Origin: Kudoa neothunni
Taxonomy: Eukaryota > Animalia > Cnidaria
Length of the DNA: 64,000 nt
Assembly: GCA_964304625.1 (NCBI GenBank)
Contig: OZ199839.1
Span: 4,203,292-4,267,291, forward strand
Direction: 5' to 3'
Positions within the stretch are counted from its first letter, which is position 1. The number at the start of each line of letters is the position of its first letter. The position numbers and the translations under genes are program-made. This document shows, in pieces, positions 12,889 through 43,400 of the stretch. Below the pieces are notes generated by a model, which worked only from the letters and a program-made list of their open reading frames with translations, was not told the DNA's origin and searched no databases.

Positions 12889-13088
12889 CCCCTGATAGAT
12901 CATCGTATAGCGCTCTCGTATATGGTCATTATTAAGGGTTTATACGCCAATTAACCATTTTTATGATATTAATTCAAACAAAATAAATTTTAATAATTTA
13001 TGTATGAAATTTCAAACAAAAATATTTAAATTCGAGAAATGTTTTAATCGCACCGTGGCTCCACTAGCCCAACGTGGTCTATTAAGGG
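12889..13088. mobile_element. piggyBac-like MITE (~200 bp)
   Basis: TTAA|CCCCTGATAGATCA ... TGGTCTATTAAGGG|TTAG imperfect inverted termini; an internal copy of the right end (attaagggtt) at ~12931. Confidence 0.55.
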
Positions 13089-14877
13089 TTAGAGAGGTTC
13101 GAATCACGCTGGAAAATCGCAAAGTAGGCATTAAAATGATATGAGTAAATTTCATTAGAAAATAGGATAACGATTTTTATTACTCTTATTTCCAATTTTT
13201 CGATTACTAACATTTCAAATTAAGCGTTTAAGCCAAAAAAGGATTGGTTGAATCTTGCCTAAAATGTACTTGGAACATTTCAACTTAGTTTATAGTAACG
13301 TGGATGTTCTGTCGTATGCGATTAAATACTTACCGTAAAATTGTTGGATATTTCACAAAATTCATAATTTTTACAAAATAGCAAATGAATTCGGATAAAT
13401 AAATTTTTTTATACCTATCATGATTTTTTGTAACTTTACAAATGTGACTTTATTTTGAGGGACGAATGCCGATGAAATGAGACACTAAAAGTGTGAAGTT
13501 TGGATCATTCGTATAACGCTTAGTCAAATTCAACTTATGTACTTTACGCTAAGTATATTGACCTCGGTGGAATAAGAAAAGTATTTTTGACTCTGTTCAG
13601 ACACATTTTTGAATGAATTGTACGTGTTAATTCCAAAATCCACATTTACGTATTTGGACATTAAACATTGGAGATTTTCTTAATGTCTCTAACATGGCAT
13701 TGCAGTTATCATGAGTTTACGGCTCATCAAAATATAGATAAAATGGAAAGCTTTACGAAATAATCACTATGTATTACAAATTATTACAAATAACTAGAAA
13801 ACCGGTTTTAGTACATAATTGAAAGAGTCCTCAGATATACAAATAAATGAGTTTTTCGAATGCAGGATATTAATGTTGGCCGGAAAAAATATCATTCTTT
13901 CGGAGATATATTTCCAAAATCGAACTTACAAAATAATCCACCTCTAAAAGTTTTAATACCCGACTTCGATATATCAATTTAATAATTGATAGATAAATTA
14001 TTTTGTTCTAACAACTCTAATGTTTTTGTATACAGACTGGAAGTAATTGGCATTTCATTGACACAAATTTTGGAAGTTCTCCCCGAAAGACCTTCCTCAG
14101 CTAATATTTTATAGTTTAGGTCCGCTTGTAACCAACCCCATCGTTAAAAATTTCTGTATTTATATTAATTTATATTACACTCTGTAACAAAGTGATTATA
14201 ACAGCTTTTATCACTGAAAAAATATTATGCAAAAAGTAATAATAAGACGTTCTTATAAGTACGTGTTTCAAATCTCCGACGTTGACATGAATTAATTGTG
14301 ATCATTTACATAAAAAAGCCATTATACAATAATTTGTCCCCCTTCTTTACCTTTCTACGATGATATAATTTTCATGGATTTTTTCTCCATCCATCATAAA
14401 TAACCAAATACTGTTTAAAATAAATGATCATAAAAACTTAATATTTCCCAATAATGTCTGCAAGAAAATATCAGTGTTTGCTCATTATAGTTTCAGCGAG
14501 TAATAGCTGTCCTGAAAAATGACCAACGTATATATTTAAACTATTAAAAATAAAAGATTATTAATATTTTTGTTACTTTAGCCAGCAACAAAATTTCCGT
14601 TTAAAATATAACCAGTTATATGTACAATTAAATCAATTATAAGATTAATAATTCTTCTAAAGTTTTTATACTTCTCGATCTTGTATCTACGCATGTTTTC
14701 ATGCCTTATAACCATAAAAGTACTACCACCTCAAGTTTAGAAATATTAATACAAATTAATGAGCATCAGGCCTAGGATGCATAACAACTATAACTCTATA
14801 AAAATGTGAGACACTTTATAGGGTAGAAAATTAGTAAAAGAATATTTTATTAAGAATTAAAATTAAGGAATAATTGT

Positions 14878-20800: not shown

Positions 20801-23800
20801 TTATTAATTTATTTTAATTTATAACCAAAACTTACTTCCTCTGTGGCAATCGACTCCACAAAATCATATAAAAGCCCTCTTTGTGTAAACAAGTCGACTA
20901 TGATAAAACCAAAATTGTCCTATTTGTATAATGCAATTTCGCTACTATTTACATTTAAAATGTTACAATATTGGCTGTGTTGCACAGCTTGAAGAAGACA
21001 GTCTCAGCCACTAGGTATCGATTCTCAATTTTTGTTATCAAAATATCTCCGATCGCGTCAGCATCAGCTTTTAATGCAAGAAAATCCCCATAGAAACGAT
21101 TACATCCAATCTAAATATAAAATAACAACCACGTGCAACCTTTGATATATTACAATCTTGTAAACGTGACAAATAATGCTGAATAGGTCGCAACTGTGCT
21201 CGTTGAGGGCATAAGTATCGAGGATTTCTAAATTTGGATAACATAATTTGAAAACTCAATTAAACATAGCCGTTCTCTCATTTATATTTTTATTATAAAG
21301 TTCCTTAAAATGTATACATTTAATATAAACAATTAACTTGTACTGATGCAAACACACTCACAACCTTATTTGAAAAAAAATCATTTAGAGATTAAACAGA
21401 TATCAGCTCGTATTTTTCAATAAACTTATGAAAAAATTAAAACATTAAAAGGACCAAATAATTTGTTGTAAGTATGGCTCTTATAAACAAAAATAGATTA
21501 AAGTGTAATTAGGGGTTATTTTTTCATAACGGAAACCCATCTAAACAGCTACCACGATAATTGTAACTTCTGAATATTAATTAAACGTCTACTATTTCTC
21601 AATTATGTCTGGCAAAAACTGAATTAATGAATGGAAAAGTAAACCAATAATTTATATTATAATTTATCGACAAAAACATAATAAATATAGATCGAAGGTT
21701 ATTTTAGGTTTATAAGAGGTTTTAAGCGCCTAAAACATTTTTTAACTTATCTTAATAATGTTTTGGTAATTAATGTTTACATTGATCTATTTTATAATCA
21801 AAGATTTTAACATCAAATAGAAAAATATGGATATACCTAGATAAGGTAATCACTACCAGAGCGACCTTACAATGGAGGTGTAATTATTATTAATATTAAA
21901 AGTTAGATTGCCTTTATAACTTTTTAATCAAATGTTTATTGAATTCTTAGTTAACACTCATACTTAAGACGAAATAAATACAGTAGGTGCCCACGACCTG
22001 TTAAGTGCCCTCGAGTCGTTATGACGCATGTGAATAAAGCAAAATTTTAATATGAGCTCTTGCAACTTAGTCTCTCCTATTTATCACTATGTTTATATTT
22101 ATATTCAAAAGTATATTAATAAAATAAAATTTTCTTATAACAATCATGTAAAGATTAAATGCGATTAATCTAGTCCAGGGGTTCCCAACTGGGGGTGCAA
22201 ACTTTGGTCTCAGGTAGTGCGAGTCTTGTTTTAGTTAGGAAGCGTTGATCTAGTCTATCCTTGACTTTAATTTGTAGAAACAAACCATTTAGACGATGTG
22301 ATGATAATACCAATGATTTCTGTCAACAAAAATTTTAACAAATAATAAATGCAATTCACACATCAGGTTTTATTGCAATCAAAATTATTTTTTATTTTAA
22401 CCATAGAGGCTGGGACGATTTTAAATATAAACATGCAGAAAACTTTCTTAATGAATCACTATATCTTAAGGAAGTGTTGCGTAACAAATGAACTATTTTC
22501 TGTACTCAAGAGAAGTAGGAGTAAGAGTTAATAATCAAGATAAATTTAATATATGTTGATATACTCAATAAAATATAACTAAAGTTTTTAGCATACTCGT
22601 TAGTTGGATTTTGCTTTGGAAAAGTTTTTAATATTTTACTGGTAAAGCTTTGGCATTCTTGAACCGTAAATCGTCGTTTCTAGATCTATGACCGTAGATA
22701 ACATTTGATAATTTCGTTTTCTGAACAATTTGTACATTTTTCTCAAATAAATTAGAGCAAAATTCATAGAAATAGTAAATTTTTTAAATTTGTTTTGGTT
22801 ATTTGTAATTTTCATTCCATTATGAGACTTCATAATGGATTCTTTATTACCCAAAATCCTGTTTAAAGAGGATAGATATTTTAAGTTAAAATTATTGAGA
22901 ATTTTAGTTTATCTGTTTTTTCCGATTCGATATTCTTTCATAATATGGCATTATATCCATTTTATCTGTCAAAGAACGTACCTTCTTGGTTTTCTTCAAG
23001 TGCCCACGAGTCGTAAATTTGAGCTAATTCTTATATACAACGAATTAAAACCAAAACTGAGGTTTTAATAACTTATTATAATTGTTGTGCTTTTATTTGA
23101 TTCATTTTAATTAGTCACAGTATTGTGTAAGTCATTAAATCATGGCAGGTGCCCACGAGTGGTAATGCGCACGAGCCGTCACCTACTGTATATTGCTAGT
23201 CTAATATTGGATAATCTTCAGAACACATGAAACAAATAATATTCCAAAAATTAATGAATGAAATATGATTTTCTTACTTTATATTAAAATATTATATAAA
23301 ACAATTAATTGTTAAAAAGTAATATCAGTTTATTTTTTAACTAAAATAAAAAATGTCTGTTATTCAGCGAAAGTCAACTCTAAAATATCTATTCCGAAGT
23401 TTTCCCCATTTATATAAGTATAAACAATATTTATCTATTTTTAGGTATTTTTAAAAATTATTTCAATATTTTCAGTTATTTTTCCATATGAAGTGTAATC
23501 AATAAGTATACTTAATATTAAAATATTATTTATGGAGTTAATTTTTTTATAGACTTCAAATATTTATAACTTTTTAACCAACAATTACTCAAACTTGATA
23601 CATATGTCAAAAATAAGTACTTTGAAAAATTAATTGAAACCGCAAGTTTAGACGAAAATGGTAATAGCGATATATTTTTTCTGATTATCTTTAAATTTAC
23701 ATATTTAGCAATAAAATGTTAAAAATGTAAATGCATGCAGATAAAGGAATTTTCCATTATGTTTTGGAGTATTCTTTAATATAAAACAGAACTTCCTGAC

Positions 23801-26800
23801 TTTCTTATTAGAGTAAATTTTTTTCATACAAAACAACCTCGACTTCATATTAAGTTGATCATAAGTAATCAAAAGATATTCTGTTCTAACAAATTTAACG
23901 TTAGCTCAATAATTTAAAAGTTAAATTCTTGTTTTATTTATAATTACCAATTTCAATTAAACTAATTGTAGTATCTTATTTAAATAAACTATTAATATAA
24001 CTATCAAGTATTTATTACTAAAAATATGATATCTGATTTAATTATTTTATTTAGGTAGATTACTGATAACCTTTAAGAAATTAGTAGTTTGTTGAGCCAC
24101 TTAATTAATTAGAAAAAATAAAAGAACATCGACGCTTTTTAACAATTAAATTATGTCTTAATTATATTCTATTCGTCAGTAGAAGTGAAAGCACTCTAGT
24201 TACAAACAATTTATCATAACTTTAATTAAATATCGGCCGATTGAAACTAACTTTCATACCATTCATAACGTCAAAAGTAACGTTCCAATTAGAAATTACG
24301 AAGGATGTTATGGTGTCTGTGAGGAGACGGTTGAGTTCATGGTTTTTTTTGAATAGTGGAAAGCTTGAAACATTCATCAGTTGTTGTAACACACTAAGAC
24401 GCAATAAGTTTTTGTAAATTTTGATATCCAATACGAAATTTGTTTCTTACCTGTTGAAATTGTGTTGTGTGGCGGTATAATAACTTTCTTTGGATGATGA
24501 TCTTTCAGGAGGCCATTTAAAATGAATAAATACATTTCTTAATGCCAAACACATAATCTGATACAGCTGTTCATTTCTAAATAACGTTAAGCTGAAAACC
24601 CTCCAGCGAATAGTATATAAGCAACCTTTTGATGGAAAGTTTGAGTGGATTATATTCCATAGAATGATTGTTATCCAAGTCGGCCAGATTGTCCAGTGCT
24701 TTGATATTTAACAATCCCGAGAGAAGAATGTCATTTATCTCACTCATCCAACCATACAGAATCTCGAAAATTTTCTGAGCATAATAACACAGTTTTAATG
24801 GCCATCTATAGTTTGGAGACTGGAACATTTTAAATATCACATTTGATATATCTCTGTAGTAGATTGGATCCACTTTCATATTAGAAAAGTGCACACCTGG
24901 GGTTATTAGCGTGTTCAGTAAAAAACAGATATTTTCATCATTTTCAGGTTTGTTGATGTGAAACAACCATTGGTTTTTGCTTTCATATAAAATATTCATG
25001 AGTTGAATAATGTTAACATAGAATATTGTAAAGTCGTTATGCTCCTAAAGGGAAAAGTTTATGATGTTTTGTGCAATTTTGTCATATATATTATATATTC
25101 ACGAGATCATATTCAAAATGTGATACCTGTTGTCTGACTAATAAATTGAAAATTGTGACTATTTTCGAAAGAAGTAAATCGGAGAATTCTGGATTTAAAT
25201 AATGACCGAAGGCTGTCATAATGCTATTGGTGGTCAAGTCTTCATTGTGATATTTATTTGTAAATAACGTCATGGCCAGCATAGCAAACCGTGTAGAATT
25301 ACTGTTTCACATCATTTCCGGAGGGTTGGAGTCAAAAATTAAATTAAACTTTAAAGAATATAATTTACTTATCTTCTTTGGTGTCGAAGGTAAGTGTGGC
25401 TACGTAAAACGAGTTGATCCTTCTTGGCGAAAACGGCGCTGACTAGATAAAACAAAAGTCAATTGACAAAATTATAATATCTTAAAAGTAATGTATCGTC
25501 TATTTTTACATTATCAGTGCCGGATTTTCTATCCAGATATTTCATAATAATAATGGGCAAACGGTTAGCAATTCCGGTATTGTAAGGAAGCGAAATTTTT
25601 GGGTTTGACACAGATTTTGAGCATGTAGTTCCAAAAACACTCGATGAAATTTCATGTGCCTTAAATGAATTAAAAATCAATTTTTTATTTATTCAAGGAT
25701 ATTATTGTATACCATTTGAAGAGCTTTTGAGTCGCATCTATTATCGGCAAGAATCTTCATCACTTGTATTTCTCCGCTATTTTTTCCAGCTAAAAATCAT
25801 ATAAATCGAACCATTAGTATAAATAATCAGATTTTTTGTTAGTTAAAAATACACATGAATTCAATTTCTGACAAATGCGAATTTCCTATCAATTTAAGCA
25901 ATTTCACAATCGACATTAATGTTTTTTCTGCACAGTGTTCTGGTTTAACACCAACTTTATCCACCCACTGATATTCAGCGGCAAGCAGGTTACAACAATT
26001 CAAAACCATCTTGCAAGCCCAAAAGTTATCAATCCACAAAAAAATATACAATGCATGCTAAAATATATTTCGATAGTGATTATTTTTTCTATTCTGCCAA
26101 TGCTGGAAAAAGTAGCTACGTTACCTCTACGGATTGAAGTGATCTGGATATTAAAGACTCTAGGCTGAGATTGATTTCCTTGATCTAAATCAAATATAGT
26201 TGATGTTGATAAAAGGTGTGTTAAATATACTTTATAATTGGGATTTCTCTTCATATATTTAAATTTTTCTTCCATAATAAATCCAATGGCTTGAACTACA
26301 TTAATGACAGTAATTTCGTTGGATTGCGTTTTGAGAACATCTTCAGCTAACACAGAAGCTAGTAAGAAACTACAAATATAATTTGAGAATTAAAATAAAT
26401 GTCTTTTATAAGCTGATATGGAAATACTGCAAGGAGATGTTCTTTTCAAACCAAATACTCATTGTTGATTCTGTATAGAGTACTTTAATAATCTTTAAAT
26501 ATAACATCGTAATATTGGAATAACAGATCAAAAGAAGAGGCGTTGTTACTTCATTTATTTCATCTGATATTTCTGGCAATGAATAATGCACTAGTAGTTT
26601 ACAAATACAAATGATGACGGTATTGATTTCTTCATATGATGAATTGGATGCATCCTAAATAGACTGAGCATAAATTGAGTTTTTAATGCAAAAATCTACC
26701 AGTAACATTTGATGTAAACATTTTTTGTATATTCGAAGACAGCTATGTAGCCACAATGTAGTTGAGTCATCAACCTGTCGATCCACTTCCTTTACTGCTT

Positions 26801-28918
26801 TCTAAAACCACGAATAACATTGTTTACAATTTTAGAAAGTTTTTGATTTTAAATACTTTACTGTTATTACTGTTGAGAGAAGTGTTTGATGTGCTTATTA
26901 GTTTCTCCTGCAAAGAGCAGCTTAGCTTCAAAAAGTAAAATAAAATGAGAATAAATTTTTAAAGTATTGAATATACGTCATTAAAGAACTCAAGAAAACA
27001 ATTGTTGAATTTGATATCCTTTATAACGGTATGGATTTTGGGCCAAGAGTCGTCATAATTTTTCTAAAAATGGTGCCATTTTAGATTATTGTTATCACCG
27101 CAGCCAATGCATACCAGACTAGAAATCAAAGCTATACATCTAACAATTGTTGTTGCATTTAAGTTTTTATATTGAATAAAAAAAGATTGGAGATAGTTCT
27201 TCCGCAGTAATACATTTGTTGAGAAGCATTGTTTTCAACAATGAAACAGCAAAATCCAAAGTGGCACCAGTTGGATGAATATTTTTTGATAGGGTAGTGA
27301 ATAATAATTTCTAATGTACCATATTGATAATCGATACAACCAGTAATAGTGCTTTCAATGTTAAATGTTACTTTTAGTCGCTCACTATAGTTGTTAAAAA
27401 GCTCGGTAGCTTTAGAGCGATGTATCAATTGTAGGTAGGTGAACATTTGGCAGAAATGATACGTGGAGATTAGAGTTAGTTCTGTGTCAGTATTTTTTCC
27501 GCTGGTTAAAACTTTAACAATGTTGTTTAGGTTAGAAATTATCTAACACGCCGATTTCAAAATGAATGTAATACTAAACATCTTTTTAATATTACATTAT
27601 CTTTTGGTAATGTGTTGTCAATGGCCAGATTGACAAATTCAGTAAATAAACGCTATAGAATTGTTCAAATCAGCAACCAAACAATCAACATAAGTTACTG
27701 GATGGAAATATATCAGTACACAGAAAAAAGCTGCTATGTTTTGGCGGTACTTGGAAGAATCCATCATTTTGTTCATTTTTTCCAGCAAACCCCACACCTG
27801 TTCCACAATAGTATTGTCAGGCTGACCGAAATGCTGGTTGAATTTTTTTGGGTTGTTCTCAACAAGTAGACTGATGGCCTATACGAAATTTTTCATTTAA
27901 TATATTTTGAGAGTTAAAAATCATAGTCTCATATCAATAAAGTTAAGAAAATTGCGTCAGCTAATGAGAAAAGCGGGAATAATCACCTCGATCGACTTGC
28001 AAATCAGTAAAACCTTTATTACTTTTTTTCGATATAAGCATACTTGAGAGGTCTGAAAAAAAATAACAGCGATTTTTGACAATCGATTATTAACCAAATA
28101 AAAAGTTAGCCAAATGTTGGAAATCCATCTCCAAACAACTATATAATGAGCCAAGAGTTTGATCGTCATCTCCTTCTTTATTTTTGCCTTTCACTCTTAA
28201 TTTTTTGTTTATACCACTGAAGAGTTAGTAAATACCGCATATTAATACACGTAGAGACCAATTCAAAATGTTTGGTACTCAACAGTCGCAAATATTTGCA
28301 TGCGTACACCTCAATATATGGGTCAAATGGCCCATCTTCATTGGTGACAATCTACGATGGATGATTGGTTCACAACGGAAATCACATACAGAAATATAGG
28401 AATTACTCGAAGTAGTATACTAATAAAATATCGCAGTTGCTGGTTTGTCAACTCAGAATAATGTTTTGGATAGTTCTACAAGGGTAAATCAAAAGATAAA
28501 TTACAAATGATTTATTACCCTTTTAAGCGATTTATAATAAAGGTAAAACCAAGATTTTTTATTCACGGCAGATTCAATTTGCCAATTAGGCTAAACGTAT
28601 ATCAATAAATATACACACAAAGAAAAACTAATTTATACTTTTGGTGTATCCAGATGGCTGAAACTTTGAATCACGTCACCAAAAAAACTTGAAAATCCCT
28701 GGTTTCCAATCTCGTCTAATGTTTTTTGAATATTTTGGTATCGATAGATAAATTCATGCTGAGATGCGATACTGAAAAAATACTAAAAAACAAACATCCA
28801 ATTCGATATATTTCTAATTACGCACAAACAGGTTTACATGTTTAGCACTGGGGTTGACGTGTGAAGATTCTCCCGGTTTAGATTTTTCACATCTTTTATT
28901 TTGCTTGTACACCCTCAT
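14878..28918 (-). CDS. NF1: Neurofibromin (RasGAP-Sec14-PH, HEAT-like flanks), many short introns
   Basis: RasGAP motifs on the minus strand: arginine finger QVLFRSESGALKL (~20750), YEVDSRRI..NNNRNNL, SIFCLRFFNPQI (~20300-20340), KILQNIAN..KEEFMQPFD (~20110-20165), followed by a Sec14-like segment (PWILVIDAYGF). Long helical N- and C-terminal regions. Stop TGA at 14878; start ATG 28918 is tentative. A ~2.9-kb intron (~21290-24200) contains a transposon. Confidence 0.85.
19607..19630 (-). repeat. (AAC/AAT)n microsatellite encoding poly-Asn inside NF1
   Basis: gttgttgttgttgttgttattatt; ORF 19487-19846 reads SLNNNNNNNNDSS. Confidence 0.8.
21981..23188. mobile_element. Non-autonomous pogo/Tigger-like element in an NF1 intron
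   Basis: TA|CAGTAGGTG ... CACCTACTG|TA termini with TA TSD; motif GTGCCC(A/T)CGA(G/C) repeated at ~21987, 22005, 23000 and 23149; decayed minus-strand coding remnants. Confidence 0.8.
22176..22247. mobile_element. 72-bp hAT (Charlie-like) MITE nested in the pogo-like element
   Basis: Perfect 8-bp TSD ATCTAGTC (22168-22175 and 22248-22255) around CAGGGGTTCCCAACT ... AGTTAGGAAGCGTTG. Confidence 0.85.
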
Positions 28919-29863
28919 TCTTTTTGGTGAGAAACGGAATTACTATCAATATAATCACCCTTTATCTAACAATCTTATGCGCGTGATTTTGTTGTACTTT
29001 TTAACACCTTATCTACTTATTTGAAAGGGTATAATCTTGAAACACTGAATGTGTATATATGATATAAGACCGAATCACTTTAATCTTATCATTTATATGT
29101 TAAATATTAAGTATAATTTATCTAAGTATTAATTTTACGTTGTTTTCGTCAACCCAGGCCTAAAGTCGAGTCAACCCTAACCAGTTTACTATTTAAGTTA
29201 TGGGATTTAAAGCTTAGTGTATGAGCGAAAAATCGAATATAGCGTTAGCTGTGAAACTAGATTTTAATTCTTCGAATTTGCATATATAAATCGTATTTAT
29301 TGTATACACATCAATGAAATACATTGAAACAATGTCAACTATATATTTTTCTGCCCTATGTCCGAATTATAAAAGAAAGCAGACAATATAAGATAGCCGA
29401 ATAATTAAGATAAAAATCTCAATAACATATCTTTTTCTGTTATCTTCCAATACAAAGGTGACAAACTTTATAGGATAATCCTGGTTTTGAAATAGATCAT
29501 TGGCTACTTTTTTCGATATTTATTATTCCAAGTAAATTGTTTTTGAAGGTTTTCTTAAAGTGAAATATGTCATATGACTATGCTACATGAATAATTCCTC
29601 AGTTCTACAAACGTTTCCAATATCAAGTAAACGATATCAAATAAATAACTTGGTGCAAATCTTATTGGCTTAACGATAATTACCATCTAAGTCGACTAAA
29701 AGTGGAAAATTTGATATACATCAGAAAACACAGCTAATTCGTTTCTCACATATACTTTTTAAGTTTTTAATAATTTTTGATCAATTATTCTAAATTTAAG
29801 AATTCTTTTTCAGTACAGTTAGTTGTATCTATAGTTAGTAATAAAGAAACGTTTAGCATAACG

Positions 29864-32171
29864 TAATGTTTCCCGACCTTTTTTATCCGTTGTTCATATT
29901 TTTTCAAAAAAAAAGATTTGATGACACATATAAATATTAAATAGATTGAATAGAATTAAACGTTAATAATGTTTATTTGTTGATAATATTTATTTTCAGT
30001 ATTATGTATAAAACTCAATAATAATTAAATTTGTGTACTTTTAATATAATTATTGTTAATATGTTAATTAAAGAATATTATTTAGAATCACTTGTGCTGT
30101 GAATTTTCAAGCTTTAATATTACCTTTTAAACAAACATTAATAAACCGCTAAGCTTGTCTTTAATCGTTTTTTCGTATTTTAATAAATGTTTTAAATATT
30201 AATTTTATGTTATCATCAGTAAAAGTTACAAATTATCAATATTTGTTTACATATTCTCCCATATTCAATGTGACGAGGGAACAATAATTTTTTATTTATT
30301 TCTCACTGTTCATAAAAAAATGTGAACAAGCATTGTAGCATGTATTCTTTTAAACTCAATATATTTAAACATAATATTTATACCACTTTTTCGAATATAA
30401 ATTTCCATTATCTAATATCAATGCTTTTTAATCCGTCTGACACTTAAAAATAATTTATTCATATGGTAATTAACTTTTTATTACAAAAAGATACTATTTC
30501 GTTATTCATTACATTGTTATATATATATTAAATAGATATAATAGTGTTTGATAATACTTTTATTTGTAATATTTAAAAATTTAATGTAAACAAGTATAAA
30601 ATATTACTGTAACATTAGTTTCTATCAAGAAAGGAATGAATGATCATATCAGAGAATAAGACGTTGACTTGGTGTAACACCGTTTGACGGAGATCTAGTT
30701 TAATGTAATTTTAGTTATATTAGTAATTAACCAATAATGTTGACTATAATATGAAAAACAAATTTTTTACAGAACAGGATTTTTTTCCATCCGCAACTAT
30801 TCTACAAATCAAATTTGTTTAACGCATAAATAAAGATTAATTATTTATCATAATTTTAATGAAAAAATTATACTTTTTAAAATATTCAACATAAACAATT
30901 TAATTATTTAATTTGGGAATAAAATATAATATACGCCCAAGGGTGTTGTTATCAATGTTTAAAAAATTACTTTTTTTAGTAAATATTTTAGGTGATAAGA
31001 AAACTATTTTTATTAAACGTTTTAATTATTTAGGTTTATGTATTAATTAATAGACATTGTCTTTTTATGAAATATACGCTTTTTAAACATAATACATTAA
31101 TGTGCTTGATGAGTACTTTAGGGAGTTATATTTTTCTATTGAATTGTAACACAGACAAACGCCGATTATCTAGAAAACTTTTGACAAATTATTTTCCTTC
31201 CATATAACGAGATTTCGGTTCATCTAACAATTATCAATATTCAAACTCAATTAAATCAAAATATAATTTATAATATCTTTCAGATAATACGATTTTCGGA
31301 TAGTCGACAGTTCTTTATATTTCACCTAAATGCGCATGCTTAATTTACAGCATATTGTTTTCGTTGTATAAAATATATTTTATTGTTCATCTAATACACG
31401 TTAATATCTTATTTTGATATAAAACCGAATTTTTTAGTTTATAATTTTTTTTATATTAATTTTGAAGTTAAAACAAACGTATAAATTCATTATCTCCCCA
31501 CAAATGGTCATGACGATATAATTTTCTTTATTGAATACTTTTTTTAAGTCGTGAATGATTTTGAAATATGTGTGGAAAAAATATATGTGCCATTCCAAGT
31601 GTTTCAAAATGATTCATTGCAATTTTATTTGTAAATTAAAAATATCACGTATTACAATCAATTATAAATACTGTTGTATACACACAAATAAAATAAAAAT
31701 GTGAATGTTATTTAAAATTTACTCCTTTCATAATTTTCTATTGTGTTCAATAAAATATTTAGAAATTTTATTTCGTTGATTATAAATATGACCGACAGAT
31801 CAATGATAAAAAAATACAAATTGGATCGTACGAAATATATTCTCATGAGAGAGCTACTTGGCACATTACTTTGTATAATACAAATCATTAATTTCGTATA
31901 ATTTGATGTAATTAACTAATAAAATTCCATCTGTAGAGTAATTTCAGATTAATAATTCGGCGAGAAAACTGAAGTGTTGTAAATACCTTTAAGTTTTAAT
32001 AGTTAATTTTGATGTGCAATGTAATTTCTAAATATGCTCGTTCCATATACATATTTAATGGATAGTTCTACTTAAGTATTAAGTAATTAAAAATCCAGAA
32101 ATTCTTCATAGACCTCCAAAAATCTGCCACAACCCACCTGTGGAGCATATGATCAACGATTGGTAAGACTG
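29864..32171 (-). mobile_element. Heavily decayed hAT-like element (possibly two fragments)
   Basis: taatgtttcccgacctttt at 29864 and ttggtaagactg|ctctagaa at 32171 resemble hAT termini. Faint minus-strand remnants ICRIVADG (~30790) and LKLH*TRSPSNG (~30690) resemble the hAT xDG and LLHxxVRWLSRG motifs. TSDs do not match. Confidence 0.4.
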
Positions 32172-32789
32172 CTCTAGAATTGTACTCTCTATTTAAATAA
32201 AATCATAGTTTTACGCATATTGTTGCAATTCATTTTAGTTCGTAGCGGAAATCCAAAGAAATTTGTAGTTTGCAGCACATCATCCCTTTTTATCAATTTT
32301 AGTGACTAGTCTGTTTACTGGTTTTCAAAATAATTTCTTTTTTAATTTTTTCTCATTTGCATGAGCATAATCTTCTTTAAATCAGATTCACAAGGTATAA
32401 TTTTGTAAAAAAGAGAAAATTTTTGCGTTGGGCATATATATTATGGTTTCTGATTCATTTCTAGCAAGAAACTGAACACCAACGTTGATATGTAAGTTAA
32501 ATAATTTTGAATTGTATATAATTAAAATGAATAAAACAAAGGAAGTTTTAACTAGTTATATAAAAGTTTAAGCTTAGCCATACACCACCATATGTTGATA
32601 TGAATTTATAAAGTGAGTAATTAGAATAAAATACAAACTTTATATTAAATATTGAAATTGTTTATGATTTTAGAATGAATTTCACATATATAGAACTCTC
32701 ATCTCGCCTAAATCCATATGACTAATTAGACCAACTGTTTTCCAAATGTTTTGTTAATAACAAGCTGGTTGGACCATTATTCATGTACA

Positions 32790-35340
32790 AAATGGTATCG
32801 TTACCATCGGTTATCCTATAGTATTATGGAGTCGGTAACTACAGAGCATTCTCAATCCGTAAAATATTATTTTTAAAACTAAGATCGGTTATTCAATTGA
32901 TAAGTGAAGTTTCTAGCATGTATTTATATTTGAATTATCTACCTATCACTATCGTCAGAGAAACATCAACCACGAGTTCTAAACAAACTTGCTCAAAATG
33001 GTAAAGCAGTTCGCAAGGCAAAAGAAATTAAAACTGAGTTTGACCAGAAAAGGCGCAAGAAACATCGATGGGGGACTGCAAAGAAAATATTATTTACCGA
33101 AAAACATATAGTAAGGTAATTAAAGTAAAGTAGGTATAGTGAGGGAATGGTAATAAGTTGTAACTGATAATGATTAAGCGTCAGCGTTAAAGAGGTACTC
33201 GTACACATATTGGAAATGGGTTTCAAAGTCATCCTCAAAGTCATCACAACTGAAACTGTGTACTGCGAACTCGAGTTCATCACATACTTCTGAACAACTC
33301 ATCTGATCCTTTCGTTGGAGGTGTTGTTTAATGTGTTCGAACACACCATCCATTGGATGCTCCTTGTTAGCATACGTAGGTGGAATGATGATGAAATTGA
33401 AGGAGAAGTCTGAGTAACATCGAGAAACATGATTGAACGCAAATTGCAACTGAGGAGAGTAGTCAGAAACGATAGTGACACTATATTTATGTTGTTCAAT
33501 AAATTTTTCCTTTATATCTTGAAGAATATTTATGTAGTTGGAGAAGACGATTTTATCCCAGTTGAGCGAAACGAATGCGTTATTGTTCTTACCCATTGCA
33601 ACTAAAACATCAAAGCTCATTTGAGTTCTGTGTTGAGAGGGTTTATTTTGTCTCAAGGTGTAACTAAAATTATCAAACATTTCGTCGTGGTAATCGACAG
33701 TGAAATTATAGACTTTTTTTCTGAGAAAAAGTACATCTTGGATGAGCTCGGATGTTTCCACGTCCATTGCGTAGCTAAATTAAAACGAAGAATAATTTAA
33801 ACTATCGTTGTGCAACTGTCCAATAATGATATTTTACCTTAACAATGAGTAAAGCTCGTTTATAGTAAAACTTCCCATCCTTCTAGTGAAAGAAGGGGCG
33901 ATATGGTGCTTAACACTCATGAACGAAGAAATGAAGGAACTTGAAACTTTCCTTTTGATGCGATTCGAAATCATATTCGATAATGTGTAAGGACTAAGAT
34001 CGTCGTGCCAGGTCAAAATATGCCGTAGATACTCTTCTTGTGTAAACGTCAACTGACTCAATTCGTCAACATTTTCGCTATGCAGACGGACAGTTAGCTC
34101 GTATTTCAGATGATAATATATCTTTTTGACACTAGCCAGTGGTAAACCTAGCTTGGCTGCAACAACTCTTGGACTTGCTCTTTTTTTCTGAATGAGTAAA
34201 TAAAAATTTAAATCAATAAGAAAAGAAGAAAAATTTGATTTTTGTATCACTCTGATAATGTCCTAATAGTCCAATAATTACTGATAAGCATACTAACGTA
34301 CACATAAATAGGAAATTTTCGTGACACATTCGCATCGTTAAAGTCAATAGATATATTAAAATATAGGAATTATTACTCGTATCAATCGCTTCATGTTTTG
34401 AATAAGAGTGGTCTCATATTCCAACTGACCGATAGAAGTAGAATCCATTTGATCAAAATGCTCACAGTCGAACTTTTATTAGAATCAGCAATGTAAACAA
34501 GAGTTGCATTGTCACAAGATATTTGTTGCTGCCACTTCATTTTTAGGCTTTTAGTTCATTTTCCAGGGTTACTATTTTGAAATAAACTATTCAAGCTGCC
34601 ACTGTTATATTTTAGGTGTGAGGCGTCGCCTTGAGTGTTGGTCGCTTTTTTTGGGAATTGCCTAGCAAATAGATTCGACCTAATGTCACGTTTTACACTT
34701 CATGATAGTTAAGAATTGTTGTAGTTATTTCACAACAACAAGAACTTAACCTTTGAATGATGATGCTATTAACAATTAGTAACGCTACATCATTTTAACA
34801 AGCCTCAAGGTTTTTTCTACATACTGATTAATCGTTTATATTAATTAATGTAAAATGCAACATTCTTGATCTGAAACGTATTTCTAAAACATGCCGACGT
34901 AAATATATCTAAGCACTCATCTGTTCATTAGATAACAAAAATAATCTTCGGTACCATCACAATGACCTAGGCCTACAATTTTTGAACACGTCTATTGAGC
35001 GTATAGAAAATATGGTTCAATATTTTTTAGCTTCACGGAAAATTTGAAATACACAGAGCCAACTAATTTTTAACTTGGCGTTTTAATTTATTCAGCACAA
35101 TGGAAAAACAAGTAAACATTTTATTTCTTTAAACCTTCATAAAAATTAATTCACTGATCTTTTCACAGCTTCAAATAATTAACGCTTTTCATACCTTATA
35201 CAAAAAAGAATAATAATTTATATGAATTTTTACATGGAAGTATTTTAAGGAGGATATATTATGAAGAGGAAGACGGCGAATCGAATAATTTTTATCGTAG
35301 AAAATAATTAATTTATTAAAAAGAACACACACTACCAATA
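32790..35340 (-). repeat. Inverted segmental duplication, copy A
   Basis: Coding, intronic and flanking sequence aligns by eye to the reverse complement of 52640-55256, e.g. ttgggaattgcctagc at ~34651 vs gctaggcaattcccaa at ~53390, and aatttatatgaattttt at ~35215 vs aaaaattcatataaatt at ~52744. Boundaries approximate. Confidence 0.85.
33174..34448 (-). CDS. Intron-containing, transposase-derived protein (Tc1/mariner-IS630 type, predicted catalytically dead), 340 aa
   Basis: Exons 34448-34377, 34187-33838 and 33774-33174 (GT-AG introns of 189 and 63 nt) join into an uninterrupted 1023-nt CDS. HTH1 SPRVVAAKLGLPLASVKKIY; HTH2 LTFTQEEYLRHIL...RKVSSSFIS; RNase H-like remnants VLFLRKKVY / VTIVSDYSP / IIPPTYANKEHPMDGVFEHIKQHL. 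Confidence 0.8.
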
Positions 35341-37430
35341 ATTATCCCAACAACATCAAAAGTCTGATCTGATTCTGCTCAATGGGCGGAATTATAATTG
35401 CACTTAGGTCACATAGAATAGCGAGCGTACATTCTAACCGAAGTTTCATCACCGAATGCAAAAACAGTGACCTTATTGATGCGTTAACTTACAATTTAAT
35501 GAATATTAATCTACACTAAATTTCCATTCCAATTATATAGTGGGCGTGAGGAGCGTTTAATGCTTTATAGGAGGTGAGAACCACATTTATAGTTTGGAAG
35601 CGTTGTTTAATTGTATCACTATTAGATCCTACAGACAAGATAATCACAAATTTCCCTTTTTGTTTGTGCATTACGTTAATATTCTATTAAATAAGAAAAA
35701 TATAATGCTGTATAAACTCCTATATTTGATGGAAGAGCACACGGAGGAATATTTTTTTTAATATTACGTACGGTACTTAAACACATAAGCATCTTCCCAA
35801 GTAATTCGGCTAACAATTTAAAAAATACGAAAAAATTGCCATCAACCTCATTTCCAATAGAACGAAAAAGTAGGTGATTAAGGTCAACACAACACTTTCA
35901 CGAACATTGCAATTTGATTGCATCGCTTTCATTTTGAATAAGATATAGAAAAATATTCATCAATAAAGTAACCCAAAATAAAGAGCTTAATTCCATGAAT
36001 AATTATTAACAAAGTTATATATTACAGGCAACATAATCTTCCTTCAAAAGTAACAAGCTGGTCATCTACAGTGACATCCCGATTTGTAGTATAACATAAT
36101 GATAGGATATAAATTAACTTAGGTAGGATAAACGTCACGAATCAAACCAAATTTTTGTTTTTCTCTGCGCTCACCAACGCTGTAGTCATCTAATTACACA
36201 GATCATGATATAGATTTGAACTTTCGAATCTATATCGGCGACGTATTTGGCTATCTTCGATCACATTGATTAGCTCCGGTTATTGTTTAACTCTATATTT
36301 TTATGCACGTCAATTAAGATTAATTTTCCTATATACTCTATATATTAAATACACTTCACGTCCTTCTAGTTTACCCAAGTGCATTATTCATTATTTATCG
36401 TAAATATTTGTATTTTAAGAAATACGTTGACCCATAACCTTAGTAAAAAAATATTAAGACATTCAAAGATATTTTTTTATACATTTAAAGGAGTGAATAA
36501 TAAAATCATGACAGAAATTCATAATGTTTTAGAAGGAAGTTTACTATCTTCAAAAATTCTATGGAATCGTCCGAATATTCTAATTTAATTATCACAATAA
36601 TAATCGGATGTTAAGGACTTATTGTTTATGTAATAACTTACCTGAACACGTTGTTTAAGTGATACAAATAGAGAAAACAGGACTCTGCCAAGCTCAAGGC
36701 TATTTCGAATTTTTACAACCATAATTCTATAAAACTAAAAATTACTAATAGCTTATCACAGATGTAAGAAAATTCAATTAATTCATTAACTAATTAAATA
36801 TTCGCATTTATAAATATTCCTAAAAGTAAAAAAATATTTTAAACATCACAAAAATCCGTGAATTTCACAATAAAAAGCTAAAGATCATTGTAATTTTAAT
36901 GGTATATTTAAACGGATTTATTATTGTGGTATTATTTTAAATTAGTTGTCATAATGATCACCATGTTCACTTTTCAAATATGGAAACATCTCTTTTTGTA
37001 TTTAAAAATCCAAAGTAAGACAATTCAAGATTTTCACTTATTATTTGGTGCTAAAATAAATAAATTTACAAATTATTAATAGAGTGTCATTTATAATCTT
37101 GGGAGTAATTTAAGCAACTTTACTACTTAATGGGATTGTGGCGCACGCATAAAATCGTATCAAACAATCTATTAGCAATGGTATCGATTCTAATGTTTGA
37201 ATGACAAAATTATCTCACTCTATATATTGAACCAAATTATTTAAATACATTATTTCCTGATTTTACAGATATTATTAAATTTTATTGTGCAATTAACTTG
37301 AAAAACATATAATTTCAACTTTTTAAACAAAATTGTATATTTTTTATTGATTTTAAATGTACAAAAATAATTATAGCGAATTTATAAAATCACAACAATC
37401 AGCTCTCCACTGAATAAACTTATTATTAGT

Positions 37431-37440
37431 CTGCGCACGC
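37431..37440 (+). promoter_or_regulatory. Candidate promoter element TGCGCACGC (NRF1/Ewg-like)
   Basis: GC-rich motif ending 28 nt before the FLII ATG in very AT-rich context; related motifs precede UTP6, NF1 and the TPR-like gene. Confidence 0.35.
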
Positions 37441-37467
37441 AATTTCTATTTACAATTTTTATTATCT

Positions 37468-40400
37468 ATGGGTGACTATTATAAGAGCATTTTGGGAATA
37501 GATTTCTCCAACTACGAATGCAATGTAATATATTGATGTGAATTATTGTCGATAAGATGCCATTTTCGGCCGATGGATAGGAATGGTTTAATAATGTGAC
37601 AGATAAAATGCAAAATTTGGAATCCATCAAAATGGATTACACACATTTATCTGATCTTGAATTTTTGTCCAAATTTCATAATTTGGTACTTTGATGGTTG
37701 ATTTGATATTTTGTTTTAATGAGTGGCTGGTGTAGGAGGAAATTAGTTGTAGAAATAATAATCTCGAGAGTTTGCCCGATAGAGAAGCTGAGCAGCCCAA
37801 CCAACTAAAAGTTCTCATTAAAATTATTTATGTCATCACGATATTTACGGATTGTGGTAGGTTTTGAAGTTATCGAAAAACCGTTTGACGTTTGAAACCC
37901 TAGAAAATTATCTAACTAGATACGATACACTTGAAACTATAGTAATATTATTTCTTTTATTAGTTTTATTTATTAGTGTTGTTAGGATTTATCAGAAAAC
38001 AATCTTGAGGATATTCCTCTCTCCATAAAAAACCAACATAATCTCATCGTGTTAAATCTATCAAAGAACAGGTAATTCGACAAATAGAGATGATTTAGAT
38101 GAAGCATTTGTCTTTTAGAATATCTTCCTTGGATCGTGATGTGATTTTTGTCGGTCATTTTATTTTTTAAAGTCGTTTCTTGTAGCTATTTACCGATATG
38201 GAACAACTAAGATTTTTGAATGTATCCCGCAATCTGCTGGGTATTTTTGGGTTTCTTTTAATTGATGTTGTATAATGTTGTCTATAGAGGAAATGCCTTT
38301 CAACATTCAATGTCAGGAGATACAACAAATGGTAGTGGTTGGCGTGAGGATAGATTTAAATTATATTTATAGGATTTAAGCTATAACCCTTTTAAAACCT
38401 TGGACTCTGAGTGAGAGTGATCTGTTGATGACTCTAATTGAATATTTAGTTTATTTCTTAATCTATCATCAATTAAAATATTGGATCTCTCCCATGTCAA
38501 TGTAAAAATTAATAATTAATGTTATTCGTCGATGTGGGGGAATTTTAGTTGCAACAATTATCTGAAAACACCAATCTTTTTACATTGTTTTGTCCCCTAA
38601 CTAACTTGATTGGTATTTCGTTCGAATTTTATTTCATTATTAATTTACTGCCACTAATATAATAGAACTCAATGTATCACATAATGAATTGAAAGAAAGT
38701 AATTTATTTTAATTTACAAATAAAAATTTGATTTCTATTGTTTAGTTCCTTTGTCTGTGTACGAGATTGTTTCGCTCAAAAAACTCAATCTCTCACACAA
38801 TAAAATAACTATGATATCGTCAAAGATTTGTATACAAATTTTAACTACATAAGACTATATGTGGCCATTAAAATTTAATCCCTTTTAAATTAAATTGCGC
38901 ATATGCAAAATTATTTTTAGCCCTCGAACACCTGAGGAAAAAAGTTACACAAATACCATGTGGTGGCCACATGAAAAAATGTATTAAAATAATTATTTAC
39001 GTTATTTTTTACATCTTGAAATCTAATAAATTTAGTAAAAAAATCAGGGATGCATTTTTGTGACGCTTATTTGCGCAAGTGTGAAGAACGGGAATAATTA
39101 TGCTTTTATGTATGTTGAATAGCGTGAAAAATTAGAGATAAACTGTTTCATTTTTCATATTTTTCTTCCCATTATTATTTTAACAGATACGATTTTGTTT
39201 TAATCTCAAAATCCATGATTTTATCATGAAATCTCTTCACCAGTTGACAGAAATATGTTAAAGTGTCAAGTTGTTATAGAAACCAAAAAATGGATGTTAA
39301 TTAATTCCTTGCTTCAAAGTATAGTAATAATGTTTATATTACCACAGATAAGCTTTTTTATATATTTTAACTAATTAAACATTATTATTTATAAGGTGGG
39401 CAGATTCAGGTATTCTTGTAACTTTTTTTCTTTTTTTGATTTTAAGCGGAAGTATTAAATATAAAACTCCATTATTTAAGTATCTTTAAGAACACCATTA
39501 TACTATAAAATACACCAAGGGGAAACAGATAATAAATTATTTTCTAGCGTTATTGATTAACAAGCGTTGATTGACCACCTCCAGGTATTCGAGGGCTGAC
39601 TATTATACAACTGTTATTTAATAAGTTAACAAATGTATTTTCATAAAAAACTAATCGAATTAATCGATGCATTATATGTTAAAAATAATTCATAATAATT
39701 AATCTTAGTCAAACTAATAGGATTAAATTCTAACGGACAAATAGTCATTACTTCCTTTTTTTATAAAAATCTAATTTTACTCCTGAATAGCCCATTTGGT
39801 TGAGCTCACTAGTTTGAGTTTGTCTTCAAATAGACTGGGAACTTTACCAGTATATTCGTTGTTTTTTCGTTTTACTTTTAATTGATTACAGTCTGCAATC
39901 ACCCACCTTGTCAGTTTGAGATGTCTATACTTGAATGGTAACTTTAAGTGTGATATTTATGGAATGTATTTTGTTTCTCAAGACAACAAACTCAATCTGT
40001 ATACAATTCCCGATAGTTTTGAAAAATTGGAGAATCTAGTATATTTTGTATAACAATTGACAAATGAGGTTCAATTTTTCGTAAAGACGACATTTATGTG
40101 TGCATTCAATGAGCTCACTTCTATTCCCAAGTCTCTGTGTGAATGCGGCCAGCTGAGCACTCTGATCGTCAATGACAACGATCTTCAAACTGTTCCCGAA
40201 GAGATTTATTATTTAAAGAACATGAAAGTCGCTTTAAATATAATCAATGCAACTTTTTAAAAAATCTATAGACCTTTGATTATCGCAATAATCCGAATTT
40301 CGTTATGCCAAAACGTCCCTCACTCGATAACGATGAATTTCGAGGAATGGATTTCTCTTATGAAAATGTGAAAAATATGGTTATCACCATGTTGAAACAG

Positions 40401-43400
40401 AAATTCAAACTTGAGCAGGAAGGTTTTTATTATTTTTTCTTTGATTATTACGATATGATATTATATGAGAGGTTCATATTTATTGTGATCTATTCATATT
40501 CTAGGACGAGAACGACTAAGAATCCAAAAAGAGGTATTTTTTCGAATTAAATTATATATGGCGGAGTTTATTTGATATTGTAATCGGCGCGATTTAATTT
40601 TAAAAAATATGGCACATGCCTGCGGCTAAAATTATTTATGCATATTTTATATTTGACTGGGAAGCTAAGATTATACTTTTAATATTTTTTTATATTGTAT
40701 ATGTGCAGTTGAAATAATTGCAAGGGTTTAGTCGACTTTTCGTACAATTAGCGCGCGCATAATATAATGTAATTACGATTTTTGCATAGTTGGAATATCG
40801 AAGGTAGTTTTTTTAACTTATTAATTTTAATAAGAAGCAAACATATTTTTATAGTTATTCATAAATTAATAGTGAATCTGCTGTAAATGCCGATACAACG
40901 CTTTTTATTTATTTGTTAGAGATTTGAAATACAGTTGAACCTCGATTATCCGGAAAATTTGGGACCATCAATTTTCATAAAAATAATGAGGCTCCAGTTG
41001 ATCGAGCATAAACAACGGTATATGTGCGCGCAGTTTTAAAATTTCTGCTTAAATGATTGTTTATTTAATTTATAAACGATTTTCACTGTTTATTAACTAA
41101 AATAGTTGAACTTCTGTAACTTAAATTAAAAATATTGGCATATCTATTAAATAAGAATATGGAAATTTAAAATAAAAATAAAAAACAATGCGTGGTTATG
41201 GGAGAAAAACACGTCTACATAGGAATATCCTACTTTATTAAAATATCGATAATTAATGTTTGTTTAATATAAATACAGGCATGTGGTCAGATATAATACA
41301 AATTTATATAAGAAATTAATGCTTAATTTAAGTTTTAAAAGAAAAATTTTTAAATAATTAATCTAGAAATACTTTTGTTTCAAATATTGCATTCGCGTAC
41401 ATGCTACATTGTATATTTCGTACGGTGATGGGTGGTACTTTTATCCGGAATTATGATTAAATAATTGTTCCGCATAATCGAACATTATCGTCACCTAATT
41501 TCAATAAGATCCAAATAAAATTTAAAATATCATCCAGATAGCGTGATTTCTGGAATATTTAGGTGCGACTGTATGTGAAAATAATCTATTCCAATTTTTA
41601 ACAATTAATTTATTATTATTAAAGGATATTAATATGATGTAAAAATATTGATTTCGTTTTTATCGACTTAATTGATTTTAAACTGATAAAATAATAACTT
41701 TTTAATTATTTGTAGAGAATTTAAAAATATTAGCTAAAAATTCAAAATATTGATTAATAGTCTTAATCCGACCATAGGTGTAAACTAGGATATTTAAAAC
41801 GCATGTCAGATAACCCTAAAATACATAAAACAAGACTTATTAGTTGGAAATAAGAGAACTCATTATAACTCAATATATTATGAATTTTTAAATTATTCTA
41901 ACGCTTTTTAACTTCGATATTTGAATGCGATCATTTTTTGGAATTAATTTTTTATATTTTTCCCCATACATTAGCAAATAATTATTATTTTAATAAGATA
42001 CCGAAACTTCATTTATAAATATTCGATTTCAACTTAGATATTTAAACGCTAAAATGAAACGCGATTGCATTTTATTGTTCGATATGAACAGATCACTGGA
42101 AAGTAAATTAAATGATAAAACGTAATTTAATAAATTGAGCTAAAAGCGAGTTAAAATTAATTGTATTAAAAATATGTAAAATAATTAAACAGAAATCGTT
42201 CTTTCATAGTTTCTAAGTTTTATTTTTTTGAAATTTACGTTATCACGAATAAGGAATATGGAGTAAGTATCGCGCCACTATTAAAAAAACTTTACTTTCG
42301 ATTAACATTATTCAAGATATTCATGATATTTTTATTTTTTTTATAATTTACTATGCTAATTTTAAAATTCCCAACATACCAATATACTGCATTTTTAACT
42401 ATAGTAAATACTGATTAGATTAATTACCAAGTACTCTGTCCATTAGTGGATTTTTATTCTGAAATGCTTATATTGTCGTCTAGAAAGAACAAGTAACCCC
42501 AGGCGCAGTCAAGGACAACGCTGAAATTCAAGTTTTTTCTATTTTACAATGATTCGTGATTGAAAATGGGTTAGAAAATAATGGATGTGGAATCGAAGAA
42601 GATGAAATTGGTTATTCGTTTTGTAGAAAATTATATTTAATATAAAATTTGTATAGAAACCTGAATCTAGTAGCTGATTTTTGTGGTGGACTACTAGAAC
42701 ATTTTTATGGGTGATCTTTTAGTTAGTTCTACTTGTGCTTCCTCTGTGCCAGAAGCACCCCTTGTTCCAGAGTCACTTCGAAAATCATTTGTTGATCAGT
42801 ATGTTTGATGAATAGTATGATATTTTATATTAATTTAAATAATTTAGATCATTTGACACTCATTTGGATGTCAAGATGCTCTTCCCCGAGCATGTCACCA
42901 GTGACGTGGGTGTTTTCAAGTTCCATATTGAATCATTCCATCCCGCTCTTATTGACAGTTCTTTAAATTCCATATTCTATTCAGGAGATTGTTATATTGT
43001 TTTGGATGTAACTGCAATTGTTTTTGTGAGATAATTATTCTCTTTGAAGAATTTTGTGGACGATCAGAATGTGCTTCAGCATAATATTTATGTGTGGATA
43101 GGAAAAAGTGCTCCTGTATTTTCGTTGTATTGACGGTGGATTGATTTGTTTCGTAAATAGCTGGAAAAAATGGCATGTGCTGCTATGCATGCTGTCAATC
43201 TTAGAACCCTCGTCAAAACCACCAATCTAACATCTGTAACTTTAATTGCTGGCTCCAACTTTTGTAATTCTTCCGTTCTGTTTTAGAGAATTGAGGAGGG
43301 ACTAGAAACACAAGAATTCCTCGATGCTTTCCATGGAATCATTGATATCCAAGAGGGTATGGGTACTCCAACCAGTTTTGTTACTAACAAAAAACAAGTA

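What the first reader, a model, noticed from the sequence alone, without database searches (positions are those of the whole stretch)
33174..34448. Candidate domesticated Tc1/mariner-IS630 transposase: spliced, intact, DNA-binding but predicted catalytically dead
Seen: three GT-AG exons give a clean 340-aa ORF, whereas every recognisable transposon in the window is riddled with stops; no TIR or TA TSD could be found around it. Established: Tc1/mariner transposases are ~340-350 aa with a bipartite HTH and a DD(D/E) triad. Here HTH1 (SPRVVAAKLGLPLASVKKIY) and HTH2 are present. The first catalytic motif (ILFTDEKxF in DD37D/maT elements) reads VLFLRKKVY, so DE is replaced by RK. The second Asp (VSDY) and third Asp (HPMD, cf. 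SPDLNPLD) are separated by 37 residues, the DD37D spacing. Inference: a host-recruited, lineage-specific protein that binds DNA without cutting it, e.g. a transcription factor, a repressor of related transposons, or a non-catalytic partner in a DNA-rearrangement complex (analogous to the inactive PiggyMac-like proteins of Paramecium).
Basis: partly seen in the sequence, partly recalled or inferred. Interest (0 to 1): 0.85.

Follow-up and report, generated by a model that had tools for sequence, protein, structure and literature searches.

The report
Dead Tc1 transposase kept as gene
A fish parasite (very probably the myxozoan Kudoa neothunni) has kept a full-length but non-cutting copy of one of its own jumping-gene enzymes as a small, selected gene family, and the gene's two introns came with it from the jumping gene.

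Summary
Observation confirmed; interpretation partly. Three GT-AG exons (72+350+601 nt) give 340 codons. The genome matches Kudoa neothunni (inferred from assembly statistics). There are three distinct loci: this one, an intact paralog on another chromosome (52-67% aa identity, same introns), and a frameshifted copy at window 53588-54868. A fourth, identical copy is probably a false duplication at an assembly gap. Selection is shown: no coding indels against 28 non-coding; dN/dS 0.55, neutrality rejected. No TIRs. Tc1/IS630 origin is well supported, but not DD37D/maT: the genome's own TIR-flanked DD34E elements carry both introns in the same place and phase, with the same 350-nt exon 2. The introns are therefore inherited and are no sign of domestication. 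The first catalytic Asp is Arg/Lys in all copies. Constraint sits on HTH1 and the dead RNase H core; HTH2, linker and clamp loop evolve near neutrally and the AT-hook is lost. DNA binding is plausible but unshown, and a PiggyMac-like partner role is unlikely. No expression data or orthologs were obtained. The scan noted this family before on other DNA (s1-695919, probably s1-692992).

The parts
34377..34448 (-). Exon 1 (24 codons, ATG; ends in a basic stretch that continues into exon 2, NLS-like)
   Evidence: omega 0.39
34188..34376 (-). Intron 1, GT-AG, phase 0, 12 codons before the HTH1 turn (10-11 in the local Tc1 elements)
33838..34187 (-). Exon 2, 350 nt: HTH1 (constrained), former AT-hook linker (lost), HTH2 and WVPHEL-type linker (near neutral)
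   Evidence: same length and phases as exon 2 of local Tc1 elements; HMM 18.6 bits vs shuffle max 7.3; regional omega
33775..33837 (-). Intron 2, GT-AG, phase 2, directly before a Tyr codon, as in the local Tc1 elements
33174..33774 (-). Exon 3: RNase H-like (DDE_3) domain with Arg/Lys at Asp1, Asp2 kept (D104), Asp at the Glu3 site (D142); acidic tail
34449..35340 (-). Upstream flank shared by the three paralogs (65-71% identical), no TIR; putative promoter, with a 13-nt invariant block at 34584-34572
32790..33173 (-). Downstream flank shared by the paralogs (putative 3' UTR), fading without a sharp end
53588..54868 (+). Paralog B: same three exons, ATG, splice sites and stop; six one-base indels, one 3-nt insertion, no in-register stop
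1..41442 (.). Block repeated at 99.84% directly upstream of the window across a 200-N gap; carries a copy of the gene identical in its coding sequence; probably a false (haplotype) duplication

Best explanation
A domesticated, catalytically dead transposase gene. Steps: (1, shown) it descends from a Tc1/IS630-type transposase; (2, strongly indicated by intron positions) the source was the two-intron DD34E Tc1 family still present with TIRs in this genome; (3, shown by sequence) one copy lost its TIRs and its first catalytic Asp, diverged to about 15% identity, and was then duplicated with its flanks into three loci; (4, shown) the reading frame and protein are under moderate purifying selection, focused on HTH1 and the RNase H core; (5, inferred) the protein is nuclear and works as a non-cutting DNA or chromatin binder or scaffold: HTH1 for dimerisation and DNA contact, the dead core as a structural platform whose former metal site now carries three basic residues that could grip the phosphate backbone. 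It probably no longer reads the ancestral TIR and no longer builds a transpososome.
For: Exon 2 is 350 nt with phases 0 and 2 in both gene and elements; rough chance of both introns coinciding about 2e-5. Exon-wise HMM scores 18.6/17.4 bits (exon 2, copies A/C) and 14.7-19.4 bits (exon 3, copy A), above 500 shuffles; language-model neighbours are DDE_3, 0.93-0.94. Exon-2 tree with gene plus two-intron clade is 13.2 lnL better than the free quick tree, p-AU 0.78. A vs C: 0 indels in 1023 coding nt, 28 in about 1450 non-coding; neutral simulation expects 11 stops, none in 5000 runs was stop-free; ML omega 0.55, 2dlnL 20.9 against omega 1. Regional omega 0.34 HTH1, 0.23 up to ex-Asp1, 0.31 beta2-beta4; about 1.0 for HTH2, linker, clamp loop. 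Asp1 site basic in all three copies. No TIR, non-coincident ends of shared DNA. Exon 2 stays basic, pI 9.9-10.
Against: No ortholog found, though a housekeeping neighbour also found none, so the blank is uninformative. Omega 0.5 is mild. AT-hook linker and DNA-contact residues of both recognition helices are changed, so DNA binding is uncertain. hhalign was weak (prob 18%, E 0.0013), exon 3 of copy C scores only 2.6-7.5 bits, the unbiased fold was low-confidence (pLDDT 47), and the confident fold was built with a transposase alignment. Trees cannot place exon 3.
Confidence: 0.6

Rival explanations
1. Host-encoded repressor of the resident Tc1 elements: a dead subunit that poisons active transposase dimers through HTH1 or occupies their TIRs.
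For: At least 436 DDE_3 candidates with many open frames in a 40-Mb genome give a motive; HTH1, the dimerisation helix-turn-helix in mariner transposases (own knowledge), is constrained; full length retained.
Against: Only 11-20% identity to present elements; recognition helices and AT-hook changed; linker and clamp loop unconstrained; no TIR-like site near the gene.
Confidence: 0.17
2. Domesticated, but with a role unrelated to DNA: the fold is reused as a protein-interaction scaffold, like other fast-evolving pseudo-enzymes.
For: Loss of AT-hook and HTH2 basic residues; HTH2 omega about 1; very long stem branches; exon 3 has become acidic, pI 4.8-5.8 against 6.3-9.3.
Against: Conserved basic NLS-like stretch at the exon 1/2 boundary, basic exon 2, constrained HTH1.
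Confidence: 0.11
3. Non-catalytic partner in a programmed DNA rearrangement complex, like the PiggyMac-like proteins of Paramecium.
For: Full-length dead transposase in several paralogs; other dead transposase-like genes were noted elsewhere in the genome by first readers (unchecked).
Against: No domesticated active partner identified; paired-end interface segments unconstrained; I found no report of programmed DNA elimination in myxozoans in the papers read.
Confidence: 0.05
4. Not a host gene: a non-autonomous or decaying Tc1 lineage whose frame is open by chance or because it was mobile until recently.
For: Omega only about 0.5; copy B is frameshifted; flanks are about as similar as the exons at DNA level; no expression shown.
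Against: No TIRs or shared ends; the dead Asp1 predates the split of all copies, yet frames A and C stayed free of stops and indels over about 0.65 neutral changes per site.
Confidence: 0.07

Closest known systems
Two-intron DD34E Tc1/IS630-like elements of this genome (e.g. L027, L041, L049, L052; Pfam DDE_3 PF13358)
   Same: Length, domain order, both intron positions and phases, 350-nt exon 2, PP..P-x-acid motif
   Different: Elements have TIRs beginning TACAGT, intact D-D34-E and about 40-nt introns; the gene has no TIRs, a basic residue at Asp1, 63- and 189-nt introns and about 15% identity
TLEWI, intron-bearing Tc1-like genes of pteriomorph bivalves (bioRxiv 10.1101/656579)
   Same: Tc1-derived, low copy, no TIRs, spliceosomal introns, proposed co-option
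   Different: TLEWI keep a DD36E signature; here the triad is dead, and the introns are shown to be inherited from mobile elements
Drosophila Tc1/mariner-derived genes CG4570, cag (DNA-binding module only) and CG14478 (intact DDE) (PMC13548663)
   Same: Domestication of a Tc1/mariner transposase under purifying selection
   Different: Fits neither of the paper's two routes: both modules are retained at full length, but the catalytic one is dead and still constrained; selection is milder (0.55 against 0.12 for CG4570)
SETMAR/Metnase transposase domain; CENP-B (own knowledge)
   Same: Domesticated ITm-superfamily transposase with an impaired catalytic triad; SETMAR, Mos1 and Sleeping Beauty are the best structural matches
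   Different: No SET fusion; SETMAR still binds its TIR; mariner or pogo origin rather than Tc1 DD34E
Paramecium PiggyMac-like proteins (own knowledge)
   Same: Full-length inactive transposase paralogs
   Different: piggyBac origin, known active partner and known DNA elimination; none shown here
DD37D/maT elements
   Same: 37 residues between second and third acid in copies A and B
   Different: Spacing arises from insertions in a DD34E ancestor; third residue Asn in copy C; Asp1 absent

Membership tests
IS630-Tc1-mariner transposase (homology) | Bipartite HTH domain homologous to Tc1 transposases | tested here: met
   Gap-free HMM alignment over 87-91 residues, 18.6 and 17.4 bits, shuffle max 7.3 and 9.6
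IS630-Tc1-mariner transposase (homology) | RNase H-like DDE_3 domain | tested here: met
   HMM 14.7-19.4 bits for copy A; Atlas DDE_3 0.93-0.94; fold matches SETMAR/Mos1/SB, Z 12.3-12.7, from a model built with a transposase alignment; Pfam itself does not hit
Active Tc1 (DD34E) element | Intact D-D-E triad | tested here: not met
   Asp1 is Arg or Lys in either register and in all copies; third residue D, D, N
Active Tc1 (DD34E) element | TIRs and TA target duplication | tested here: not met
   None around A, B or C; the same script found TIRs on most local Tc1 loci
Active Tc1 (DD34E) element | GRPR-like AT-hook linker between the HTHs | tested here: not met
   GGDRR of the elements aligns to NVDEL / NVNQI / QIHNL
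DD37D/maT | D-D37-D triad | tested here: not met
   Spacing 37 but no Asp1, and Asn at the third site in copy C
DD37D/maT | Phylogenetic placement with maT | not tested
   No maT references in the trees; intron positions point to the local DD34E family
Domesticated transposase gene | Low copy number, no TIR/TSD | tested here: met
   Three distinct loci plus one probable false duplicate
Domesticated transposase gene | Purifying selection | tested here: met
   Between paralogs only: omega 0.55, p about 5e-6; no coding indels or stops in A and C
Domesticated transposase gene | Syntenic orthologs in related species | tested here: inconclusive
   No homolog found, but a housekeeping control also found none
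Domesticated transposase gene | Expression and splicing | not testable with these tools
PiggyMac-like inactive partner | Interaction with an active domesticated transposase in DNA elimination | not testable with these tools
   Needs experiment; interface segments unconstrained

The most novel reading that the evidence does not exclude
Kudoa has turned dead copies of its own rampant Tc1 transposases into a dedicated host control system: several independent pseudo-transposases that dock on active transposase or element ends, either to silence them or to steer programmed DNA rearrangement in its cell-in-cell development.
Probability: 0.12. Interest if true: 0.85.

Novelty: new variant of a known kind. 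Interest (0 to 1): 0.52.

Why it matters
Domesticated Tc1 transposases are few. This one keeps the whole protein with a dead but constrained catalytic fold, which fits neither of the two described routes (DNA-binding module only, or intact DDE). It is found in an animal with about 5,300 predicted genes that has otherwise shed much of its gene set, so a retained novel family is likely to do something useful. The case is also a clear warning: introns in a transposase gene are often read as a sign of domestication, and here they were demonstrably carried by TIR-flanked elements. Parent and descendant sit in the same genome, so binding and interference tests are direct.

Tried and rejected
Pfam scan of each exon: no significant family. 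Word-index and full phmmer searches with exon 3: nothing real; P0001 is a repeat-summing false hit. Single-sequence fold: pLDDT 47, fold searches uninformative. Inverted-repeat and TIR-remnant searches: only AT-rich chance matches. Subfamily HMMs (two-intron vs intronless) do not discriminate: A scores higher with the intronless, C with the two-intron profile; the exon-3 tree is saturated. Conserved block 35340-35220 has no shared reading frame. The match between window 40988-41515 and the region near copy C is a common dispersed repeat, not synteny. DD37D/maT reading rejected; introns-as-domestication rejected; identical upstream copy rejected as evidence of recent mobility. Sphaerospora molnari (40.17 Mb, 40 contigs, 7 chromosomes) rejected as the source in favour of K. 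neothunni.

Full report
Observation. The minus strand carries three exons of 72, 350 and 601 nt (34448-34377, 34187-33838, 33774-33174) separated by GT-AG introns of 189 nt (phase 0) and 63 nt (phase 2); each exon is open in register and the total is 340 codons plus stop. Intron 2 is a multiple of three but holds two stops, so splicing is needed.

Source. The genome has 40,260,978 bases in 4 contigs, the second of 12.04 Mb, and the window is about 30% GC. This matches the Kudoa neothunni assembly: 40.2 Mb, N50 12.0 Mb, GC 30.4%, three chromosomes plus mitochondrion, about 7x HiFi coverage, 5,316 proteins, few RNA reads (PMC12239612). The identification is an inference from these numbers.

Copies. 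Exon searches find four places. A is the finding. A' lies in a 41.6-kb block repeated at 99.84% across a 200-N gap just before the window, with 16 mismatches and 41 short indels, mostly in homopolymers, and none in the coding sequence; it is most likely a false duplication. C (contig 1, 15688263-15689545) is intact with the same ATG, splice sites and stop and 67/52/59% identity per exon. B (window 53588-54868, plus strand) keeps the same signals but has six one-base indels. The three share about 900 nt upstream and 400 nt downstream, with ends that fade and do not coincide, and no TIR. That unit of about 2.6 kb is larger than most of the local elements (typically 1.3-1.6 kb), so the copies look like segmental duplicates of an already immobile gene.

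Origin. Pfam and database searches see nothing, but language-model neighbours are DDE_3 proteins. The genome holds at least 436 DDE_3 candidates, several with open 346-366 aa frames, all those read being DD34E. One subfamily, flanked by TIRs that begin TACAGT, has two introns of about 40 nt. Its first is phase 0, 10-11 codons before the HTH1 turn (12 in the gene). Its second is phase 2, directly before a Tyr codon 18 codons ahead of Asp1 (17 in the gene). Exon 2 is 350 nt in L027, L041, L049, L052 and in the gene. Related elements in two public contigs show the same layout. Profiles from these and other local elements score exon 2 at 18.6 (A) and 17.4 bits (C), gap-free and above all 500 shuffles, and exon 3 of A at 14.7-19.4 bits; exon 3 of C is weak. 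With these transposases as alignment, AlphaFold gives pLDDT 76 and the model matches SETMAR, Mos1 and Sleeping Beauty best. That result is biased by the alignment; the single-sequence model had the same order of strands and helices but pLDDT 47. Trees put the gene on a very long stem and cannot place exon 3; for exon 2 the tree joining it to the two-intron clade is the best found and is not rejected. The intron match is the main evidence for descent from that subfamily. It follows that the introns were inherited, and that the 37-residue spacing is 34 plus insertions of two and one residues, not a maT signature.

Catalysis. At Asp1 the copies read LFLRKK, LFLKRK and LFLKRR, so the site is basic in either register; Asp2 is D, E, D and the third site D, D, N. 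By established knowledge of DDE enzymes, two-metal catalysis is not possible without Asp1. The loss predates the duplications.

Selection. A and C differ at about 28% of coding bases yet have no indel or stop, against 28 indels in about 1,450 non-coding columns and 11 expected stops. Counting methods give dN/dS 0.40-0.58; a codon model gives 0.55, with 2dlnL 20.9 against neutrality, and 0.50 on the A and C branches. By region, with branch lengths fixed: exon 1 0.39, HTH1 0.34, the stretch up to ex-Asp1 0.23, beta2-beta4 0.31, C-terminal helices 0.50, but HTH2, the following linker and the clamp loop about 1.0 (ten regions, small counts). Copy B is unresolved. Its omega (0.71) differs neither from 0.5 nor from 1. 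It has no in-register stop where 6.5 are expected if it had been neutral throughout (P 0.0005), five of its six one-base indels are insertions, and error bursts of that density occur in the duplicated block. Its flanks, however, show no excess of one-base indels. It is a recent pseudogene or an intact third copy with consensus errors.

Mechanism. Shown: transposase origin, dead site, immobility, selection on HTH1 and the RNase H core. Inferred: a nuclear protein (conserved basic stretch at the exon 1/2 boundary; exon 2 pI about 10) that binds DNA or chromatin, or scaffolds a complex, without cutting (0.6). In mariner transposases HTH1 mediates dimerisation and the linker and clamp loop build the paired-end complex (own knowledge). 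Their release from constraint, with the loss of the GGDRR AT-hook and of the basic residues of the HTH2 recognition helix, argues that the ancestral TIR is no longer read and no transpososome is built. Rivals: repressor of resident Tc1 elements (0.17), DNA-independent scaffold (0.11), decaying or non-autonomous element (0.07), PiggyMac-like partner (0.05).

Comparison. It works like a domesticated ITm transposase (SETMAR domain, CENP-B, Drosophila CG4570/cag/CG14478 in PMC13548663, bivalve TLEWI in bioRxiv 10.1101/656579), but keeps both modules with a dead yet constrained catalytic fold. It is not an active Tc1 element and not DD37D/maT. By the criteria of PMC13548663, orthologs with synteny and expression are still missing. 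Two papers hold Kudoa, Tc1 and transposon together; in the one I read (S. molnari preprint) the domestication described is of MULEs, and I found no description of this family.

Limits. Several searches with this place were sent in the same batch or afterwards (among them). The blank for orthologs is uninformative, since a housekeeping neighbour also found none.

Verdict. A real, selected, catalytically dead Tc1-derived gene family: a new variant of a known kind, interest 0.52.

Noticed in passing
L027, L028, L033, L036, L038, L041-L043, L049, L052 (genome-wide): A diverse, TIR-flanked DD34E Tc1 subfamily carries two conserved spliceosomal introns of about 40 nt (one copy group with a GC donor); relatives with the same introns occur in two public contigs (L057, L058).
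   Followed up: yes
L041, L045, L052, L053: Tc1 copies with an inverted repeat of about 790 nt at 93-94% identity that mirrors the catalytic exon.
   Followed up: no
window 1-41442 and the 41.6 kb before the window: Tandem near-identical block across a 200-N gap; probably an unpurged haplotype, so every finding in it will be reported twice. Indels cluster at 3.9-5.0 kb.
   Followed up: partly
window 53588-54868: Paralog B has six one-base indels but no in-register stop; pseudogene or assembly error unresolved.
   Followed up: partly
window 40929-41575: Dispersed repeat of about 650 nt with inverted ends, at least 40 copies at 72-80% (244 candidates): MITE-like.
   Followed up: partly
window 31500-32100: Older dispersed repeat of about 600 nt or more, some 40 matches at 64-80% identity, just downstream of the gene.
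   Followed up: no
window 6402-7205, 44020-45725, 47543-48511, 60009-61180: Neighbours: GDT1/TMEM165-like antiporter, gelsolin-repeat protein, HAT-repeat protein, and a broken Tc5/CENP-B-type (pogo) transposase.
   Followed up: partly
window 35340-35220, 34584-34572, 34221-34207: Non-coding blocks better conserved among the paralogs than their surroundings (about 80% between A and B; 13-nt and 15-nt invariant runs, the latter near the intron 1 branch region); possible regulatory or splicing signals.
   Followed up: partly
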